A DNA stretch of 64,000 nucleotides from Chrysemys picta bellii (Eukaryota), in the NCBI RefSeq assembly GCF_011386835.1, contig NC_088793.1, positions 103,540,001-103,604,000 on the forward strand, read 5' to 3'. The position numbers and the translations under genes are program-made. Shown one piece after another: positions 9,193 through 62,655 of this stretch. The notes beneath the pieces are model-generated. The model was not told the DNA's origin. It made no database searches and was given only the letters and a program-made list of their open reading frames with translations. Positions within the stretch are counted from its first letter, which is position 1. Each line of letters opens with the position of its first letter.

Positions 9193-9386
9193 AAAAACAA
9201 CAAGGAGTCTGGTGGCACCTTAAAGACTAACAGATTTATTTGGGCATAAGCTTTTATTGGTAAAAAACCTCACTTCTTCAGATGCATGAAAGCTTATGCT
9301 CAAATAAATCTGTTAGTCTTTAAGGTGCCACCAGACTCCTTGTTGTTTGTGTGGATACAGACTAACACGGCTATCTCCTGATACTT
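9193..9386. mobile_element. Penelope-like retroelement end, inverted-repeat (hairpin) insertion
   Basis: Arms aaacaacaaggagtctggtggcacc...gcataagctt and their reverse complement; tail cagactaacacggct; 13-bp TSD TCTCTCAATCCTT (9180-9192, 9387-9399). Confidence 0.75.
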
Positions 9387-14335: not shown

Positions 14336-14608
14336 AAAGCAACAGAGGGTCCTGTGGCACCTTTAAGACTAACAGAAGTATTGGGAGCATAAGCTTTCGT
14401 GGGTAAGAACCTCACTTCTTCAGATGCAAGTAATGGAAGTAAAAACCATAAATAAGCTAACTCTAATGGAATTACTTGCATCTGAAGAAGTGAGGTTCTT
14501 ACCCTCGAAAGCTTATGCTCCCAATACTTCTGTTAGTCTTAAAGGTGCCACAGGACCCTCTGTTGCTTTTTTACAGATTCAGACTAACACGGCTACCCCT
14601 CTGATACT
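14336..14608. mobile_element. Penelope-like inverted-repeat insertion
   Basis: 100-bp arms 14335-14434 and 14471-14570 with 1 mismatch; tail cagactaacacggctacccctctgatac; 14-bp TSD TAACAAAACTATAA (14322-14335, 14609-14622). Confidence 0.85.
14387..14427 (-). ncRNA. Minimal type-I hammerhead ribozyme motif (Penelope-associated)
   Basis: Minus strand GCAU-CUGAAGA-A-[GUG(A)GGU UCUU ACC CAC]-GAAA-GC-UU-AUGC: core, stem I GCAU/AUGC, stem II and palindromic AAGCUU stem III. Confidence 0.65.
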
Positions 14609-33813: not shown

Positions 33814-36800
33814 CCATCAAAGGAAGAGTACCAGTGAGACTCCTAAACTCAAGTGTTAAGGCTGTGGAGTTACATCTTCAAACCAGAGTTACAGAGGTAC
33901 ACCGGCCTGAGGAAGTGGTCCCTCAGGTGGAGGTTACCTTTGAAGAGAATGGAGATGAGCTGTGGGTGACAAGGTGGGAGAAGGGAGAACAAGTCACCTC
34001 TTCTCAAGAAAGACATGGCGGGAAAACTTCCACTTCAAGTGGCACTCCAAGGGCTGACCCCTGCACAGGTGGCCAACTTAAAGGCACTGCTAGATAAGAC
34101 TTCTTGATGCTTCTCTAAGGATGAGTGAGACTTTGATTATACCACCACAGTGATGCATTGTATAGCCACTAGAGATGCCACCCCAATGAAGAAGAGTCAT
34201 CGGAGAATTTTGCCACAAGCGTTTCAAGAGGTTAAAAAACTTGTCCAGGATCTGGTATCGCAAGGTGTTCTTAAGGAAAGCCACAGTCCCAATGCCTGCA
34301 GTAATCGTGATCTAAAAGGATGGCGGAGTGCTGTGATTTCAGGAAACTGAATGAAGTGACTTGCACAGACACCTACCCACTGCCCCAGGTGGAAGAACTA
34401 TTCGATGCATTGGGAAATGTGAGTGTGTTCTCAATCCTCAATATTACTTTGGGCCATTTCCAAGAAGCAGTGGAGAAACAAGACAGGGAAAAAAATGCAG
34501 TGATGATTTCTTTAGGACTGTCTGAATGGACACACATGCCATTTCGGTTGTGCCATGTGTCCACTATGTTTCAGAGGCTAATGGAGAGAGTGCTGGGAGA
34601 CTACATTCTGGACATCTTGTTGATATATCTAGATGATATTATTGTGTCTCCAGAGACTTCGAACGTCATATGAAAAAGCTGGATTTGGTCTTCACATGTT
34701 TGAAGGAGCATGGCTTGAAACTGAAACCTAGTAAGTGTTGCTTCCTACAAACTGCAGTCAAATTCTTGGCCCATGGGATCTCAAGAGAGGGCAGTCAGGT
34801 AGACAAAGAGAAGATCAAGGCATTGAAAAACTGACCTATCCCTAAGAATGCCAGACAAGTGAGACAGGCATTGGGCTTCATGAGTAATAAATTACAGGCG
34901 ATTTTCCCCAAAATCCTCACACAATGCTGCACCTTTACATTGGCTAGTGGGCCAATAAGACCAAAAGAAGGGGAAACGCCAAGCTCTACAGTTTGTGGGA
35001 TGACACATCAAGAAGGCATCAATGAGCTCAGAAGACAGTTAATGACACCACCTTTACTCGCAAAACCTGATTTCAGTTTGCCTTTCATAGTGACCACAGA
35101 TGGGAGCCTTCACAGCCTGGGCATGGTACTCAGTCAAAAGCAAAGGGGACCTGAAAGTGTGGTTGTGTATGCAAGCCACGGGTTAAGGTGTTCAGAGAAA
35201 AACTACAAGAACTACAGTGCCTTTCAGCTGGAGCCGCTTGCCCTTAAGTGCATCATCACAGAAAAATGTAAGGATTATTTAATCTATTCAAAGTTCATGG
35301 TGGTTTCAGACCACAATCCTTTCTGATACCTGGCAACCACCAATGTAGGTGCAGTTAAGCATATATGGGTGGCCCAGCTCTCACAATTTGCTTTTGAAGT
35401 GCATTGCAAGCTGGGAAGACAAAACATCAATGCTGACACACTGTCTCAACTGCTCCTAATGGAGGAACAGGAGGAGAGAAATTTCCTAGTAATCCCTGAA
35501 AATGTCATGCAGGCCTGCCTGTGGCTGGAGCAGCCTAAACCTGAGTGTGATAGAGACGTAAGGAATTCTCCCCAGAATGCAGTGTGGGGCAGGGGAGATC
35601 CTGTGTCTTCCAGGAATGGCGCAATGGTTTCAGGGTAATCCTGGGAAGAAATCTGGGATCCTGCAGCAGCGGGGTGACATTGGATCAGTCCTAGCAGCAG
35701 TCATAAAGCAAACAAGGCCTATTTGGACATTTGGAACCAAGCACCCACAATCCAAGAAATTAATCCTGCAGTGGGAATATTTGAAATTTCACCATGGAGT
35801 GCTATTCTAACTGATATAAGATCCAAGAGATGGAGAAGAGGTGTGGCAACTGGTTGTGCCAGTATTACTTTTCAAGAAAGTTTATGAGGCTACACATGAC
35901 GACAAAGAGCGCTTTGGAGATATGATGAGACGATGATGAGAAATTACTACTGGCCTATGGTGGTTAGTGATGTCCAGTTCTGGGTTAAGCAATGCATGAA
36001 ATGTTCCCTAGCTAAGGACATATTTCCTCATACTAGCACTCTTTTAACTTGCACCAGCGTTACAGACCCAAAGGAAGTCTTAGGAATGGATTGCACCCAG
36101 CTGAAAAGGTCTTCAGATGCATATGAAAATGTATTCATCCTCATTGACATGTCTATCCATTACCATTGCTGTTCTAACCAGAAATCAGAGAGGACAATTT
36201 CCCAGACCCTCATAAAGCACTGGCTCATATATTATACTTGTCCACCACCACTGCATTTGGACCAGGGAAGGAATTTTGAGTCAGAGGTTATCACCGAATT
36301 GTGTAAGCAGTATGACATAGCTAAGAGCCGGACAATGCCCTACAAACTACCAGGAGACATTCAGTGTAAGAGATTTAACAGGACCATGCATCACGTGTTA
36401 AGGATACTTCCACCCAAAAAGACGCGAACCTGGAAGAAGCATCTCCCTGAGTTAAGTATTGGCTTACAGTTGTGATGTTCACTCTTCCACAGGTTACCCT
36501 CCTTTTTACCATATGTTTGGCAGAGATCCCAGGTTGCCACTGGACATCCTGACCAAAGAAGGTTCCAAGAAGGAAGATATAACCAACATTGATGACTGGA
36601 TCAAAGGTCACCATGAAAGACTGAAGGGGCTCTGTGAAGTTGCTCTCAGCAAAGCCCAAGATGTAGTACAAAGCAGAAAAAGGACTTATAATCATAAGTC
36701 AGTGCATGTTTTTTTGTTTTGTTTGTTTTTGTTGGCCCTCTTACAATCTCAGGAGAGAGAGGAGTCAGGGTCAGACTGATAGGTCCCCAGGGCCAGTGGG

Positions 36801-40110: not shown

Positions 40111-41791
40111 AGATACACCAGAGGAAAATTAGTATGAGTGGAGAATCAGGCCCTAGCAGCCAAATTCTGTTTTCATTTACACCAACATAAATTCAGAGTA
40201 CCACCAATGACATCAGCAGCATTACTTTGGGTTTATTCTAGTATAAATGGGAGAAAAATTTGGACTTCTGTCCATTCTGAAGTCAGTCTGAAAGTGCACC
40301 TCAGTCAGGGAACACATTTAAAAGCAACACACAACAAAAGCCTCTCTCTTTGACAGCAGGCACACATTATAATGACAGACTCCAGAATAAACCATGAATA
40401 TAGATAGAGCAAATCATTTTCTGTGTGTAGTATCATTTTAAGAGCATTTACTGCTATTTCTTGACATAATATATTTAAATGAAGCGGTCCGTAAAAAAAA
40501 GTTTGCCCATGTTTAGGTCTATTTGTCCTGTTTACCATTATTAATCTAATTTGTCCAATACTTTTATCACACTGTGTTTCAAATCAATTAATAAGAAAAT
40601 TAAGAAATACAACTATTACCCTGGAAATACAAAGTGTCAGAAGCTGAGATGAAAGAAAGGAAGCTTAGAGTCTGCAGCGTGACCAGATTATGTGGGAGAG
40701 GTATTTTGTACTGTGCAGACCCTAACGCATACAATACTAATATCCTACTATATTGTTATCTTTGTATTAATCTTAAGGCTGTGATGTAAATAACCTGCTA
40801 TAGGTTAGATGGATGCACTAGATGTTTCTTATTTTCTGTACTGTGCCTTGGAAAGAAAAGTATATCATTTTATTTATTTATTTATGAGAGCATTGTGTTT
40901 CATTGTATGCACTGTGTTGGTTTACTGTACTATCAAGCTCACACTGCTAAATATAGATTCATAGTTTCTGGCAGTCCAATACACTTTCATCCTTTGCAGA
41001 GTGTAAGACTCAAATACAGCCCTGGTTTAAGCACATGCAAATTTGCTGGTGGCCAAGGAATTGGTCCCACTTCCCCCAGGGTTGAATTTGACCCTACTGC
41101 ACTCTGCAGAAACAAAACATAGTGCTGTTGTTTCAGAACTAATTAAATAACAGTCTTTGTAGAACACATGTTCAGCTTCTATAGTATTCTGTTTTTGCAG
41201 TTGGGAGGCCCCGGGCATAGCTCTCCCTTCCAAGCCATTATACAAAGAGGGGTTGCCACAAAAAAGAACCACTGCTAAAATGTGCAGGATTTTCCATCAT
41301 TCAGGAAGGATCATCATTTCATCCAGTTTATACCTCTTTCCTCTCATCCTGATATTAAACAGCTGCACTCTATAGTGCTCTCCTATTGGCAGCATGAAGC
41401 ACTCAGGTTACTATTGATTTTCCCTTAGCCTTATACAGAGATCATTACTTACTTTAGACCTTATAGCAGGGTCTTCCAAGACTGGGCCACTGTGAGAACC
41501 TGAAATATAGTTTGCACTTGAATTCAACTGAATCTCTGTATTCTGCAGTCCTTTTTTACACAAAACTTCTATTGACTTCCATGTGGTGACTCAGACCTTG
41601 ATGTTTGCTACTGGCTGAGCTACCTACATGCACTCCAGAATGTGGGTGGTGATACATGAAGAGGGTGTATTCTTCACCCTCTTCATGTATCAGGGAGGCT
41701 GTGAGGTCATGGCCCTCTTCATGTATTCCTGAGTTCCTCTGCATAGAGGGCTTGGCTTAGCACAGAGAGGCTCTTCTTCATTAACTCTTGA

Positions 41792-42288
41792 CAGGTTTCA
41801 GAGTATTTCAATCAACAAAGGATTAAATAAGGATTGGGAATGGCTGAGCCATTACAAACATTGAATCTATCTCCCCTTGTAAAAAGAAGAACAGGAGTAC
41901 TTGTGGCACCTTAGAGACTAACAAATTTATTAGAGCATAAGCTTTCGTGGACTACAGCCCACTTCTTCGGATGCATATAGAATGGCTGAGCCATTACAAA
42001 CATTGATTCTATCTCCCCTTGTAAGTATGCTCACACTTCTTATCAAACTGTCTGTACTGGGCTATCTTGATTATCACTTTAAAAGTTTTTTTTCTCTTAA
42101 TTAATTGGCCTCTCAGAGTTGGTAAGACAACTCCCACCTGTTTATGCTCTCTGTATGTGTGTATATATATCTCCTCAATATATGTTCCATTCTATATGCA
42201 TCCGAAGAAGTGGGCTGTAGTCCACGAAAGCTTATGCTCTAATAAATTTGTTAGTCTCTAAGGTGCCACAAGTACTCCTGTTCTTTTT
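41792..42288. mobile_element. Young Penelope-like 3' fragment with inversion
   Basis: End of ORF INKGLNKDWEWLSHYKH* (41811-41864); perfect 99-bp inverted repeat 41887-41985 / 42187-42285; 12-bp TSD ATTAACTCTTGA (41780-91, 42289-300). Confidence 0.88.
42198..42237 (+). ncRNA. Minimal type-I hammerhead ribozyme motif (mirror copy at 41935-41974, minus strand)
   Basis: GCAU-CCGAAGA-A-GUGGGC UGUA GUCCAC-GAAA-GC-UU-AUGC; 6-bp stem II; U4C core variant. Confidence 0.62.
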
Positions 42289-44175
42289 ATTAACTCTTGA
42301 GTGGATTTCACCTAGCCTTTCTACTGTTCCTCTACCCACTGATGGAACTCCAGCCCATTGCAAGGTCCTCCACAGGACACTGGAGAAGGTGATAACAATG
42401 GGATGGAATTAAGTATTTGACTGTCATTTTTGAATGGTTGTCCTTGTACAGACCCTCAGTACATTGTCTGGTTTGGCCCTTCCAGATTAATCAAAATGTA
42501 AATTTTCAAGAAGATGGCCTGCCTTTATGGTACTATTTATACCTACCTTTTTGTTCCTGCAGTTCCCTTGCGGTTACAAATCTGAGTAGTGACACCTTTA
42601 ACTAGCTTGATTGCAGGTACAGGTCAATAAATTAGAAGTCTGACTGCTCAAATGTACACTCTCAATTCATTTTGCAGGAGTAAAAATGTAGGTGCAGATT
42701 TTCAGTCATAAATTGTACCCACAATTAAGGGAGCCTGGAATATAACACAAAATATACATACCCCTAAGTGACTTGACATGCAAGAAGTCTGTGGCATAAC
42801 CCATGTTAGAACTGAGGCCTCCTGACTCCCCCTCTTGTGTCTTAACCACTCTTCTTTCCTTATTCACATAAACAAAATTATATATGAGAGAGTCTATGAT
42901 AAAGAAACCACATCAATTTAAATTCTGCCTCAAATCTAAATGTTAGAACAAACCTTTTTTTATCAAATTTTTCAAAATTTCTGTCATTTAAAACCAGCTG
43001 ATTTTAAGCAATAAACATTCTTCTGCAGCATATAAACCCCAAACATTACAGCAACAAGAATCCAAAAATGAAACAAACAATAAAAGTAAAACCTACTTCA
43101 TTGATTTTCATTGTCCAATCTGAGGGAAATGCAAACAGCAAACAGCACAAATAATAACTGTTTTAAAAATATTACTTTTGATAATCTAAGGTGTTACTGG
43201 TAACATGGGTAAAGAAAGGTGTTGGTTTATAACATAATTTTAAGTTGGCAGTGTCCCTTTAAGGTTCTATAACAAACCCTGAAAAAACAGGAACAGATAA
43301 CGGTTAAGAATTAAAGCTGGTATTTGCAAAATGGCCTGAGAAAATTAAGCACCAACTCCTAGCCTTTTTGAAAAACCCAGTCTAAAGGCACAATCCTATA
43401 ATCCTTCCTCCAGATAAATTCCCATTAAAATGAATGGAAGTTTTGCCTAAGGATTGCAGGACTGAACACCAGACTTCCAGGAGCTAAACATAGCACACAA
43501 CAGGAAAATATCAATGATGAACCCATAGTGCCCACATTATGGATTTCATTCTGAACGGTGTTTTTTTTTTTTACATACTTTAATATAGTGTGTGTCGGTG
43601 GTGGTGTGGGGAGTAAAGATTTAGTATTTTTGTGTATTATCCTATATTTACAATGTACATAATTACTTTTATTGAGTTACTTATTATAGTTTCCATAAGT
43701 AAATAAAAGATCACTGAAACATGTAGTTATGCCTTTTACAATTATTCTGTCATCTGGTGCAATTGCTGTAAATAGGTGCAGAGACATCATAAATTAATGA
43801 AGTCTGGGCAGGAAGAGGTTAACAATAAGAAAAAATGTGTCACTGCACATCCAGAGTACATGGTTTTAAAGTTCAATATCTCAGATATAAACAGGGCTTC
43901 AGCAAAGATATGCAAAAATCCCCCTGACACCCAAAATTGTTTTAAGTTGTGCAAATGTGAAAAGAAAAGAAGTTCTGGCTACTTTCTTTTAGTTAATCAT
44001 TATTATATTGTAAACTTTACGGATGCAAGACATTCCCCCGTGATGTGCACAAATCCTGTTGACATCAGTGGGAGCTGCACACATATATCTTGGAAGATGA
44101 CTGACGGTTAAATTAATTTTGTTACAGAATAAAAGCTTTCCCCCTGAAAGTTATGTTTTGCTTGCAGTTTCATGT

Positions 44176-46400: not shown

Positions 46401-48238
46401 AATGTATTGAAGTTCATGTTTCCGATGGCGTCATGACTTCTGACTCCTAACGATCTAGGGAGTGCCCCTGACAGACAATTCACGCACAGATATTAAGACA
46501 AATTATATTATGAAATATATACAGAATTAAACAGGCATGTATGTAAACATAAAATGTTGCAGTCACTAGTGTGTTAACTGCTCCAATTAAAAAGTCTACA
46601 TAACTGCAAGGGCTACAGTATGTGGCTGTTTATTATAAATGACTGTGTTATATGCTTTACACTTTGTATTTTATTCACGACTATCTTGAAAGAAGTCTTC
46701 CACTTCTAAAAAGCCCTAAAGGACTTGGAGTGAAGTGAGCTCAGGCCTCTGGCTCAGCAAGTTTGGAAGGTTTTGTAGAGTGCACGGTTAGATTCAGAGA
46801 GGAACAACACCACCGAGAACTCATAAATTGTCATTCTTTTGGGTACGCTTTCAGTCTGAGTATCCTTCTGATGATTTGCCTGGGTAATTTTAAAGTGCAC
46901 ATCTTAGAATGTGGATCTTTTGTGGTCTTGTTCTTTAAAAATAGCCTGACACTTTAGAGTCCATAAAACTGAAAGTGCTCAGGGTGCTTATGGCTCCATT
47001 GTCCCCCAGACGGAATGAAGGCAAGAAACGTTCATTCATAAACTAAGCCTTTCGTGGCAGGGTCCATAAACTGAGGAACACCACAGGTGTCTGAGTTGTA
47101 ACTTGCAGAGTAGCCTGGGAACTTTGCATGTTTCACCATTTTCAAATTGTGACTCATTTATGTATCAAAAAAAAAAAAAGTTTTCTGGAGCTCATCGGAC
47201 ACCCACTACCTCTGCTAAAAAGGGGAAGGCAAGCTGCAGCAACAGGCACAGTCCAGGTCCCGGCAGCAGCAAGAGGAACGAGAGTAAAAATCCCCAGCGG
47301 GACTGCATGACAAACTCCAGCAAAAATCAGACTCCTACACCAGCAGCAACATAAACCCAAACAAACAATGGTTCGTCCCTTACAAACTACTGGGCTTCAC
47401 TCCCTTCGTTTTGGTTTTTCAATGTAAACCCTTTTGAACCAGAGCAAACTAAAGCTAAACAAGCAAACAAGAAACAGGTGCACTTTGAGCCGGGGACATT
47501 TCCCCCTTCCACTGAATGAACTACTCACACACAGCTCAGAGTAACCCAGAGTCAGAGTCACACACCACACATAGACTCACACATACACATAATGATACAC
47601 ACACAGAGCTCTATCCAGCCAATCCTACTCCACCGCCACGCAGGCAGATTCAGACCCACCACATCCCGCACTGGCTTGCGGAAGCAGGACCCCCGCACCC
47701 CACCCACAGCTGGACCCCCTGTCCCTCGCACCCGCGTGCCAGGGACGCACCCCAGAGGGGGCTCCTCTCAGGCTGTGGCCATTCGGCTGAGGGACATGTC
47801 ACACCATTGGGGCTGTGCGCCTTGCTCTGAAATGCACCCAGCTCAAGTCCTCCCTCCTCTAGTGTGGGGGTTGTTTAATTACTACACAGTTCTTTCGCAT
47901 CAACCCCCCGGAGAGCTGGCGCGGGGCAGCGGGGGCTGAGAGCGGCCCCTCTTAGCTCTGCTGCCCAGGGACGACTTGGGGGGGGGGGAGTCATGGGGAC
48001 TTGATGCTGCTGAGCGGGGATTGTGCAGCAAAAGGCGCCTCTCCTGCTGCCGCGCTCCCTCCCCCTTGCCCCGCTCCTGGCCGCCGCCGTCGCGCGGGCT
48101 CCCAGCCACGCAGAGGGAGAGGGAGAGGCGGCACGGCTGGAAGCCTCTTCTCAGCCAGCCGGGGACCGCGGGCACTGCAATAAAACCCCAGCAGCGCTGA
48201 GAGGCGTGCTCAGAGAGGCGCTTGCGCACATCGCAGGG

Positions 48239-48256
48239 GCGCCAGATTTGGCGGGA
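48239..48256. promoter_or_regulatory. Inverted E2F-type dyad in MYB promoter
   Basis: GCGCCAGA-TTTGGCGGGA: TTTGGCGG on +, TCTGGCGC on -. Confidence 0.65.
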
Positions 48257-48330
48257 GTGGGAGTGTCCAAAAAGCCCTTTGTTTGATGGCATCTCTGTTT
48301 ACAGAGTTTACTCTTTAATCTCAACCTGTT

Positions 48331-48348
48331 TCCTCCTCCTCCTCCTCC
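48331..48348 (+). repeat. (TCC)6 / (GGA)6 tract at MYB transcription start
   Basis: tcctcctcctcctcctcc directly after aacctgtt. Confidence 0.9.
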
Positions 48349-48465
48349 TACTGCTGCTCCTGAAAACTTCACTGTGCGGCGGTGGAGCACTTTTAAGCAG
48401 CACAGAAAGCAAAGCACTTCAGCCAGCACAGGTCCCCCCTTCCTCCCCCAGTGGCTAGTCCCAGG

Positions 48466-62655
<14,190 letters not shown>

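What the first reader, a model, noticed from the sequence alone, without database searches (positions are those of the whole stretch)
41792..42288. Very young Penelope insertion: perfect 99-bp inverted repeat with an intact-looking hammerhead motif on each strand
Seen: 12-bp TSD, a perfect 99-bp inverted repeat, and a 45-bp internal duplication (41838-41882 / 41980-42024). The inversion junction has 6-nt microhomology (GAATGG). Each arm folds as GCAU/CCGAAGA/A/stem II (GUGGGC-UGUA-GUCCAC)/GAAA/GC/UU/AUGC. Known: Penelope-like elements carry minimal type-I hammerheads that cleave as dimers through a palindromic stem III (here AAGCUU). Inference: the insertion lies 6 kb upstream of MYB, so any transcript across it in either direction carries a potential self-cleaving motif and forms long dsRNA. 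The zero arm divergence suggests it may be polymorphic.
Basis: partly seen in the sequence, partly recalled or inferred. Interest (0 to 1): 0.7.

Follow-up and report, generated by a model that had tools for sequence, protein, structure and literature searches.

The report
Dead Penelope-like fold-back insertion upstream of MYB
This is an ordinary, truncated copy of a very common turtle Penelope-like retrotransposon that landed 6 kb upstream of MYB in a hairpin-shaped form; it carries the family's small hammerhead-ribozyme motif with a weakened core, and at this locus the motif would be buried in a long RNA hairpin and is unlikely to cut.

Summary
There is a 497-bp insertion (41792-42288) between perfect 12-bp target-site duplications. 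It has a perfect 99-bp inverted repeat, a 45-bp internal duplication (44/45) and 6-nt (GAATGG) and 3-nt (TAA) junction microhomologies. Each arm holds a 40-nt minimal type-I hammerhead motif.

The anatomy matches what is published for Penelope-like elements (PLEs): minimal hammerheads with an extra base after A9, G10.1-C11.1, a palindromic helix III, opposite-strand pairs 100-700 bp apart (turtles named), and an inverted 5'-truncated copy. Two sibling fold-back insertions lie in the same window. The scan has 192 notes on this element type in this genome.

- The core is CCGAAGA (U4C), whereas the siblings have CUGAAGA. No Rfam hammerhead model matches.
- The two motifs sit on opposite strands, so one transcript has no tandem partner. 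The 99-bp arm duplex (about -189 kcal/mol) abolishes the ribozyme helices (pair probability 0).
- Zero arm divergence does not show youth. At a turtle-like rate the 95% upper bound is about 39 My, and a sibling has 1/101 arm mismatches.

Verdict: already known and of low interest.

The parts
41780..41791 (.). Left target-site duplication, ATTAACTCTTGA
   Evidence: Identical to 42289-42300. It begins with ATT, the motif preferred by the Anolis PLE endonuclease (PMC11167929).
41792..42288 (+). The whole 497-bp PLE-derived insertion. The sense orientation of the longer copy is +.
   Evidence: It is bounded by the TSDs. The flanks are single-copy within the window.
41792..41805 (-). Outermost 12-14 nt. 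Read on the minus strand, they resemble the last bases of the 'tail' of the sibling copies.
   Evidence: 8 of 9 matches (CTCTGAAAC against CTCTGATAC) in nearly the same terminal register. 190 of 20000 random 16-mers from the window do as well. This is suggestive only, and it was noticed post hoc.
41806..41882 (+). Unique upstream segment plus copy 1 of the 45-bp duplicate (41838-41882)
   Evidence: family D1. There is no significant similarity to the sibling tails in either orientation (p 0.09-0.38).
41880..41985 (-). Inverted arm: the 3' module of the element on the minus strand (perfect match 41887-41985)
   Evidence: nhmmer with the arm profile gives E 3e-29.
41935..41974 (-). Minimal hammerhead motif on the minus strand. 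The predicted cut lies between 41939 and 41938.
   Evidence: Descriptor hit. It is identical to the plus-strand motif.
41980..42024 (+). Copy 2 of the 45-bp duplicate. Its first 6 nt (GAATGG) overlap the inner end of the inverted arm.
42025..42186 (+). 162-bp segment upstream of the hammerhead, presumably pLTR or 3' UTR sequence of the source element
   Evidence: It is contiguous with the direct arm and has no other copy in the window. That it belongs to the PLE is inferred, not shown.
42187..42288 (+). Direct arm: the 3' module ending at the tail-less end of the family
   Evidence: E 2e-29. It ends at the same element position as the tail-less arms of the siblings.
42198..42237 (+). Minimal hammerhead motif on the plus strand. 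The predicted cut is after 42233 (C-U-U triplet).
   Evidence: As an isolated 40-mer, the helix I + II fold is -10.9 kcal/mol against an MFE of -11.1.
42289..42300 (.). Right target-site duplication
9193..9386 (+). Sibling PLE fold-back insertion. TSD TCTCTCAATCCTT, decayed CUGAAGA hammerhead, and a roughly 40-nt tail at the right end only.
14336..14608 (+). Sibling PLE fold-back insertion. TSD about AACAAAACTATAA, canonical CUGAAGA core on both strands, a roughly 37-nt tail at the right end only, and 1/101 arm mismatches.

Best explanation
This is a 5'-truncated, non-autonomous fragment of an abundant Penelope-like retrotransposon (PLE), inserted by target-primed reverse transcription at a staggered 12-bp break.

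The sense copy (41980-42288, probably continuing from 41806-41882) is the last 300-400 nt of the element, ending at the family's tail-less reverse-transcription start. During or right after cDNA synthesis the polymerase switched template twice. One switch used 6 nt of microhomology (GAATGG/CCATTC) and the other 3 nt (TAA). The switches added an inverted copy of the last ~100 nt and re-copied 45 nt. This gives the order: unique segment, duplicate, inverted arm, duplicate, 162-bp segment, direct arm.

The hammerhead motif on each strand is simply inherited from the element's 3' module. It is the published PLE 'min-HHR', here with a U4C core change. At this locus it has no tandem partner, and in any read-through transcript it is locked in a ~100-bp perfect hairpin, so it most likely does nothing. 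If the locus is transcribed at all, the only plausible product is a long dsRNA hairpin.

Shown: the anatomy, homology to the siblings, the motif features and the folding energetics. Inferred: the order of the template switches, that the 162-bp and left-hand segments belong to the PLE, and inactivity.
For: Anatomy and junctions.

Siblings: three loci (six arms) in the window share the 3' module. All three are TSD-flanked fold-backs whose arms end at the same element position. The two siblings carry a 37-40 nt extension at one end only.

Published PLE traits that this matches:
- An inverted 5'-truncated copy and a one-sided 30-40 bp tail (PMC8557442).
- Cleavage and extension of both target strands, with internal RT starts that define the tail (PMC11167929).
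- The min-HHR features of PMC4209133: an unpaired base between 9 and 10.1, G10.1-C11.1, a 6-bp helix II, a 4-bp helix I, a palindromic 15.2-16.2, opposite-strand pairs 100-700 bp apart, and presence in a turtle.

Covariation: helices are paired in 94.9% of cells across the window's four distinct motifs, against 20-48% when the partners are slid, with one compensatory U-A to C-G change.

Folding: the full transcripts have MFEs of -242 and -241 kcal/mol with the arms paired. The arm duplex is -188.9 kcal/mol, and the hammerhead helix probabilities are 0.0.
Against: - No comparison with curated PLE consensus sequences (Repbase/Dfam) or with other genomic copies of this subfamily was possible. The PLE origin of 41806-41879 and 42025-42186 is therefore assumed from contiguity.
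- The window contains no PLE RT/GIY-YIG ORF.
- No Rfam hammerhead model matches. The same is true of the canonical-core sibling, so this mostly shows that Rfam does not model min-HHRs.
- U4C is reported to retain enough activity in vivo in a viroid (PMC3088659), and the Anolis PLE hammerhead is protein-assisted. Inactivity is therefore not proven.
- The exact order of the template switches is not determined by the data.
Confidence: 0.85

Rival explanations
1. Two independent cDNAs. Both cleaved target strands primed reverse transcription on PLE RNAs, as shown in vitro for the Anolis PLE. The two cDNAs then joined in the middle by microhomology. The left-hand 88 bp would be the element's downstream 'tail' region in antisense.
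For: Both strands are cleaved and extended in vitro (PMC11167929). The siblings have arms abutting both TSDs. The outermost 12-14 nt at the left resemble sibling tail ends in antisense (p about 0.01).
Against: The left arm does not abut the TSD; 88 bp lie outside it. Those 88 bp show no significant similarity to the sibling tails, although the arms themselves are about 78% identical between families. 45 of the 88 bp recur in the same + orientation directly upstream of the sense copy, which fits re-copying of upstream sequence rather than a tail. A hybrid remains possible: a short left cDNA of about 14 nt joined to a long right cDNA.
Confidence: 0.25
2. A copy of a pre-existing composite master. 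The fold-back with the 45-bp duplication existed at a source locus and was retrotransposed as a unit.
For: The TSDs flank the whole composite. Fold-backs are the norm for this element, 3 of 3 in the window.
Against: A transcript with a 99-bp perfect hairpin is a poor template. The arms would have had to stay identical in the master. The microhomologies at both internal junctions are the signature of template switching in a single event. No second copy of the unique parts exists in the window.
Confidence: 0.07
3. A functional element: a self-cleaving ribozyme pair or a dsRNA/small-RNA source that affects MYB transcription.
For: It lies 6.2 kb upstream of the MYB start codon. A perfect 99-bp hairpin would be an ADAR or Dicer substrate if transcribed. 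U4C hammerheads can retain some activity in vivo.
Against: There is no evidence of transcription. The hammerhead fold is excluded in read-through RNA. A cis dimer is impossible because the motifs are on opposite strands. Metazoan min-HHRs cleave poorly even as dimers. Two similar insertions lie elsewhere in the same intergenic window, as expected for neutral debris.
Confidence: 0.04
4. An assembly artefact or a post-insertion rearrangement, such as an inverted duplication by replication template switching kept identical by gene conversion.
For: Perfect palindromic structures can arise in long-read assemblies. Gene conversion between arms could erase divergence.
Against: The perfect TSDs, the 201-bp unique spacer, the same architecture in two diverged siblings and the element-specific arm ends all argue for a biological insertion product.
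Confidence: 0.03

Closest known systems
Minimal hammerhead ribozymes (min-HHRs) of metazoan Penelope-like elements (Cervera & De la Pena 2014, PMC4209133)
   Same: Type-I topology with almost no helix III, but a palindrome (AGCU, extended to AAGCUU). An unpaired base between A9 and G10.1, a G10.1-C11.1 pair, a 6-bp helix II and a 4-bp helix I. The motif sits in the element's terminal repeat, pairs occur on opposite strands 100-700 bp apart, and turtles are reported as hosts.
   Different: The core reads CCGAAGA (U4C) instead of CUGANGA. The two sibling families in this window keep U4. Activity is untested.
PLE insertion architecture: pLTR, inverted 5'-truncated copy and one-sided 30-40 bp tail (Craig et al. 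2021, PMC8557442; Frangieh et al. 2024, PMC11167929)
   Same: An inverted copy of the 3' end next to a longer sense copy, and a TSD at an AT-rich site beginning with ATT. The arms end at a fixed element position that, in the siblings, abuts the TSD or is followed by a 37-40 nt tail.
   Different: The inverted arm here is not at the edge of the insertion. 88 bp lie outside it, including a second copy of 45 bp of upstream sequence, so two template switches are needed. At most 12-14 nt of the tail are present.
Twin priming / 5' inversion of LINE-1 insertions (my own knowledge of Ostertag & Kazazian 2001; not checked here)
   Same: Inversion created during target-primed reverse transcription, with microhomology at the junction.
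   Different: L1 twin priming inverts an upstream part of the same RNA without duplicating it. Here the inverted piece duplicates the 3' end, giving a true inverted repeat.

Membership tests
Hammerhead ribozyme (type I, PLE min-HHR variant) | 5' core box C3-U4-G5-A6-N7-G8-A9 | tested here: not met
   The sequence is CCGAAGA, so U4 is replaced by C on both arms. The siblings at 14 kb and 9 kb have CUGAAGA.
Hammerhead ribozyme (type I, PLE min-HHR variant) | 3' core box G12-A13-A14 with an A15.1-U16.1 pair and H17 at the cleavage site | tested here: met
   GAAA is followed by GC-UU, and the triplet C16.2-U16.1-U17 obeys NUH.
Hammerhead ribozyme (type I, PLE min-HHR variant) | Helices I and II closing the core, with G10.1-C11.1 | tested here: met
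   Helix I is GCAU/AUGC (4 bp). Helix II is GUGGGC/GUCCAC (6 bp, one G-U). The fold is -10.9 kcal/mol against an MFE of -11.1. 94.9% of cells are paired across four motifs, with one compensatory change. Four sequences are too few for significance (129/500 shuffles).
Hammerhead ribozyme (type I, PLE min-HHR variant) | PLE-specific traits: an unpaired base between 9 and 10.1, and a palindromic 15.2-16.2 allowing a dimeric helix III | tested here: met
   There is an extra A at 42209, and AGCU lies within AAGCUU at 42228-42233. These traits are listed in PMC4209133.
Hammerhead ribozyme (type I, PLE min-HHR variant) | Match to a curated hammerhead covariance model (Rfam) | tested here: not met
   No hammerhead family matched at E<=10 on 1.1 kb or on the 76-nt arm. 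The canonical-core sibling also gave none, so the models do not cover min-HHRs.
Hammerhead ribozyme (type I, PLE min-HHR variant) | Self-cleavage | not testable with these tools
   This needs in vitro transcription or RNA end mapping.
Penelope-like element (PLE) | ORF with a telomerase-like RT and a GIY-YIG endonuclease | tested here: not met
   The insertion is 497 bp and non-coding. None of the 10 ORFs scanned, out of 15 of 130 aa or more in the window, matches a PLE RT or endonuclease. Only LTR-element RNase H and integrase remnants appear, at 34.8-36.5 kb. This is a fragment, so membership rests on the terminal module.
Penelope-like element (PLE) | Hammerhead motif in the terminal repeat, a short distance upstream of the insertion's 3' end | tested here: met
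   The predicted cut at 42233 lies 55 nt from the end at 42288. The layout is the same in both siblings.
Penelope-like element (PLE) | Inverted 5'-truncated copy and/or partial tandem | tested here: met
   There is a 99-106 bp inverted arm. All three loci in the window are fold-backs.
Penelope-like element (PLE) | [quoted passage not shown] | tested here: inconclusive
   The tail is clear in the siblings. In this copy only 12-14 terminal nt at the left end are tail-like (p about 0.01). The rest of the left 88 bp is not.
Penelope-like element (PLE) | Similarity to a curated PLE consensus (Repbase/Dfam), and clade assignment (Penelope/Poseidon, Neptune or Nematis) | not testable with these tools

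The most novel reading that the evidence does not exclude
The U4C core is a property of a whole subfamily that went on multiplying; other first-stage notes on this genome say so, but this was not checked here. If true, this lineage is a natural experiment. It would show either that hammerhead catalysis is dispensable for PLE retrotransposition in vivo, as the Anolis in vitro data suggest, or that the protein-assisted min-HHR tolerates U4C. Separately, this copy's two microhomology junctions record a template-switching path of the PLE reverse transcriptase.
Probability: 0.25. Interest if true: 0.35.

Novelty: already known. Interest (0 to 1): 0.12.

Why it matters
It matters little by itself. 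It is one more dead insertion of a repeat whose hammerhead motif, fold-back form and one-sided tail are all published, and which this scan has already noted many times in the same genome.

It has three modest uses:
- It is a clean example in which both internal junctions show microhomology, which bears on how PLE reverse transcriptase makes inverted copies.
- It is a data point for the U4C subfamily.
- A perfect 99-bp inverted repeat 6 kb upstream of MYB is a possible site of assembly trouble or instability, and a presence/absence marker for turtle population or phylogenetic work if it proves polymorphic.

Tried and rejected
- Rfam covariance search, on 1.1 kb, on the 76-nt arm and on a canonical-core sibling. 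There was no hammerhead hit at E<=10. This is uninformative for min-HHRs rather than evidence against the motif.
- I tested whether the left 88 bp are the element's tail in antisense. There is no significant similarity to the sibling tails, so I rejected this except for the terminal 12-14 nt.
- A search of the window with an nhmmer arm profile for more diverged copies found only the three loci.
- A Pfam scan of 10 of the window's 15 ORFs of 130 aa or more found no PLE RT or endonuclease.
- No supplement of PMC4209133 listing turtle motifs is held.
- Covariation counting on four motifs gave one compensatory pair, which is not significant.
- Weak miRNA-shaped Rfam hits at 41650-41692 merely reflect a neighbouring hairpin.

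Full report
**What is there**

The sequence between 41792 and 42288 (497 bp) is flanked by two identical 12-bp copies of ATTAACTCTTGA, at 41780-41791 and 42289-42300. Inside, 41887-41985 is the perfect reverse complement of 42187-42285 (99 bp). The match extends to 106 nt at 98%, the outer ends differing by a CTT slip. A 45-bp direct duplication (41838-41882 and 41980-42024) is 44/45 identical.

The inner end of the left arm and the start of the second duplicate share GAATGG (41980-41985). The first duplicate and the outer end of the left arm share TAA (41880-41882). On the + strand the order is:
- a unique 46 bp;
- duplicate copy 1;
- the inverted arm;
- duplicate copy 2;
- a unique 162 bp;
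- the direct arm.

The MYB start codon (MARRPRH...) is near 48466 on the + strand, with further MYB exons near 52990 and 55318 and a CpG-rich promoter region at 47-50 kb. The insertion therefore ends 6.2 kb upstream.

**What it belongs to**

The arm is a repeat. blastn and an nhmmer profile find exactly three loci (six arms) in the 64-kb window: this one, 9193-9386 and about 14336-14608.

All three are TSD-flanked (12-14 bp) fold-backs. Each has one arm on each strand, and the arms end at the same element position. In the two siblings the left arm abuts the TSD directly. Their right arm is followed by a 37-40 nt extension, 88% alike between the two, before the TSD.

This is the published anatomy of Penelope-like elements:
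- High 5' truncation, an inverted 5'-truncated copy forming inverted repeats, and a 30-40 bp 'tail' often at one end only (PMC8557442).
- In vitro, the Anolis PLE protein cleaves and extends both target strands, prefers an ATT motif in AT-rich DNA, and starts reverse transcription at two internal sites whose spacing is the tail (PMC11167929).

The window holds no PLE RT/GIY-YIG ORF. Of the 10 ORFs scanned, only unrelated LTR-element RNase H and integrase remnants matched. These three loci are therefore dead fragments. No curated repeat library was available, so the family and clade name could not be assigned.

**The hammerhead motif**

At 42198-42237 (+) and 41935-41974 (-) the sequence reads: helix I GCAU, core CCGAAGA, an extra A, helix II GUGGGC-UGUA-GUCCAC, GAAA, GC-UU, helix I AUGC. 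The predicted cut is after 42233.

A descriptor I wrote for this architecture finds only these two sites in the window, and none in 30 shuffles.

The idiosyncrasies are those listed for metazoan PLE min-HHRs: an unpaired base between 9 and 10.1, G10.1-C11.1, a long helix II, a short helix I, a palindromic 15.2-16.2 in place of helix III, and frequent pairs on opposite strands 100-700 bp apart. Turtles are named among the hosts (PMC4209133).

Across the four distinct motifs in the window, 94.9% of cells are paired, against 20-48% when the partners are slid. One helix II pair changes from U-A to C-G. With four sequences this is not significant.

Two caveats apply:
- The core has C at position 4, whereas both siblings have CUGAAGA. 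U4C is reported to decrease activity considerably in vitro, although it remains sufficient in vivo for a viroid (PMC3088659).
- No Rfam hammerhead model matches at E<=10. The same holds for the canonical-core sibling, so the models simply do not cover this minimal form.

Metazoan min-HHRs showed no cleavage as monomers and only low cleavage as dimers. The Anolis PLE hammerhead needed the element's protein and was not required for insertion.

**Why the motif is unlikely to act here**

The dimer mechanism needs two sense copies in one RNA or in two RNAs. Here the two copies are on opposite strands, so any read-through transcript contains one sense motif and its exact complement.

The antisense arm is always transcribed first, in either direction; this follows from the geometry. 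The sense motif therefore emerges with its partner already present.

ViennaRNA gives MFEs of -241.9 and -240.6 kcal/mol for the two full-length transcripts, with the arms fully paired. The arm/arm duplex alone is -188.9 kcal/mol, against -10.9 for the hammerhead fold. In the full transcript the pair probabilities of helices I and II are 0.0. Even in RNAs that hold only the sense arm, helix I has probability 0.02.

Whether the locus is transcribed at all is unknown.

**How the structure arose (inference)**

The simplest reading starts from one RNA whose 3' part was: left-hand segment, 45-bp segment, 162-bp segment, arm. The product carries an extra block, inverted arm plus a second copy of the 45-bp segment, and both junctions of that block show microhomology (6 nt and 3 nt). 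That is the signature of two template switches in one synthesis event.

Two routes would give this product:
- Snap-back of the nascent cDNA on itself at CCATTC/GAATGG, followed by a return to the RNA.
- A jump to the RNA's preferred start site during second-strand synthesis, followed by a return at GAATGG.

The data do not choose between these routes.

I tested the alternative that the left 88 bp are the element's tail in antisense, which would mean two independent cDNAs. They show no significant similarity to the sibling tails. Only the outermost 12-14 nt resemble the tail ends (p about 0.01, post hoc). That could be a short second cDNA primed from the other target strand.

**Age**

The arms were identical when made, so identity only bounds time since insertion. 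There are 0 differences in 111 paired bases (arms plus TSD), or 1 in 156 if the duplicate is included. I used a rate of 0.35e-9 per site per year. This combines my own figure of about 1e-9 for humans with the statement that turtles evolve at about one third of the human rate (PMC4054807). The maximum-likelihood age is then 0-9 My, and the 95% upper bound is about 39-43 My.

The 14-kb sibling, from a family only about 78% identical, has 1/101 arm mismatches. Near-perfect arms are therefore normal here. 'Very young' and 'polymorphic' are possible but not supported.

Two blank look-ups by reference in the scan's own index went out in the same turn as that request. I then sent no letters of this stretch to any collection search.

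**Relation to earlier notes**

The scan's index holds 192 notes on Penelope hammerheads in this genome. They include follow-ups that reached the same verdict (a known 2014 motif in dead fold-backs) and notes of a subfamily-wide U4C core. I could confirm U4C only for this copy, and its absence in the two siblings.

**Verdict**

This is a real feature, correctly described, and an ordinary instance of a known kind. The functional and age inferences are unsupported.

Noticed in passing
window 41650-41726: A perfect 18-bp inverted repeat with a 7-nt loop (41650-41667 / 41675-41692), plus a third copy of its 14-nt core at 41713-41726, lies about 100 bp left of the insertion. It gives only sub-threshold miRNA-shaped Rfam hits (best E 0.21) and has no other copy in the window.
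   Followed up: partly
window 9193-9386 and about 14336-14608: Two further TSD-flanked PLE fold-back insertions from diverged families (about 78% identity to the finding's arm). Both have the canonical CUGAAGA core and a 37-40 nt tail at the right end only. In the 9-kb copy the right arm starts inside the hammerhead, at GAAAGCUU.
   Followed up: partly
window 34859-36475: Remnants of an LTR-retroelement pol gene: an RT-RNase H ORF (34859-35326, Pfam E 1.6e-18) and a weak integrase ORF (35933-36475). They are unrelated to the PLE. I observed them only.
   Followed up: no
window 47000-50000 and 48466, 52990, 55318: A CpG-rich region covers the MYB promoter and exon 1 (start codon near 48466). 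Later MYB exons encode GKTRWTREE (about 52990) and the R2 repeat (about 55318).
   Followed up: partly
window 41838-41856: The 45-bp duplicated segment begins with its own small palindrome (AATGGCT-G-AGCCATT). It contains both GAATGG and CCATT, the same words as the switch junction, and may have favoured pausing or template switching there.
   Followed up: no
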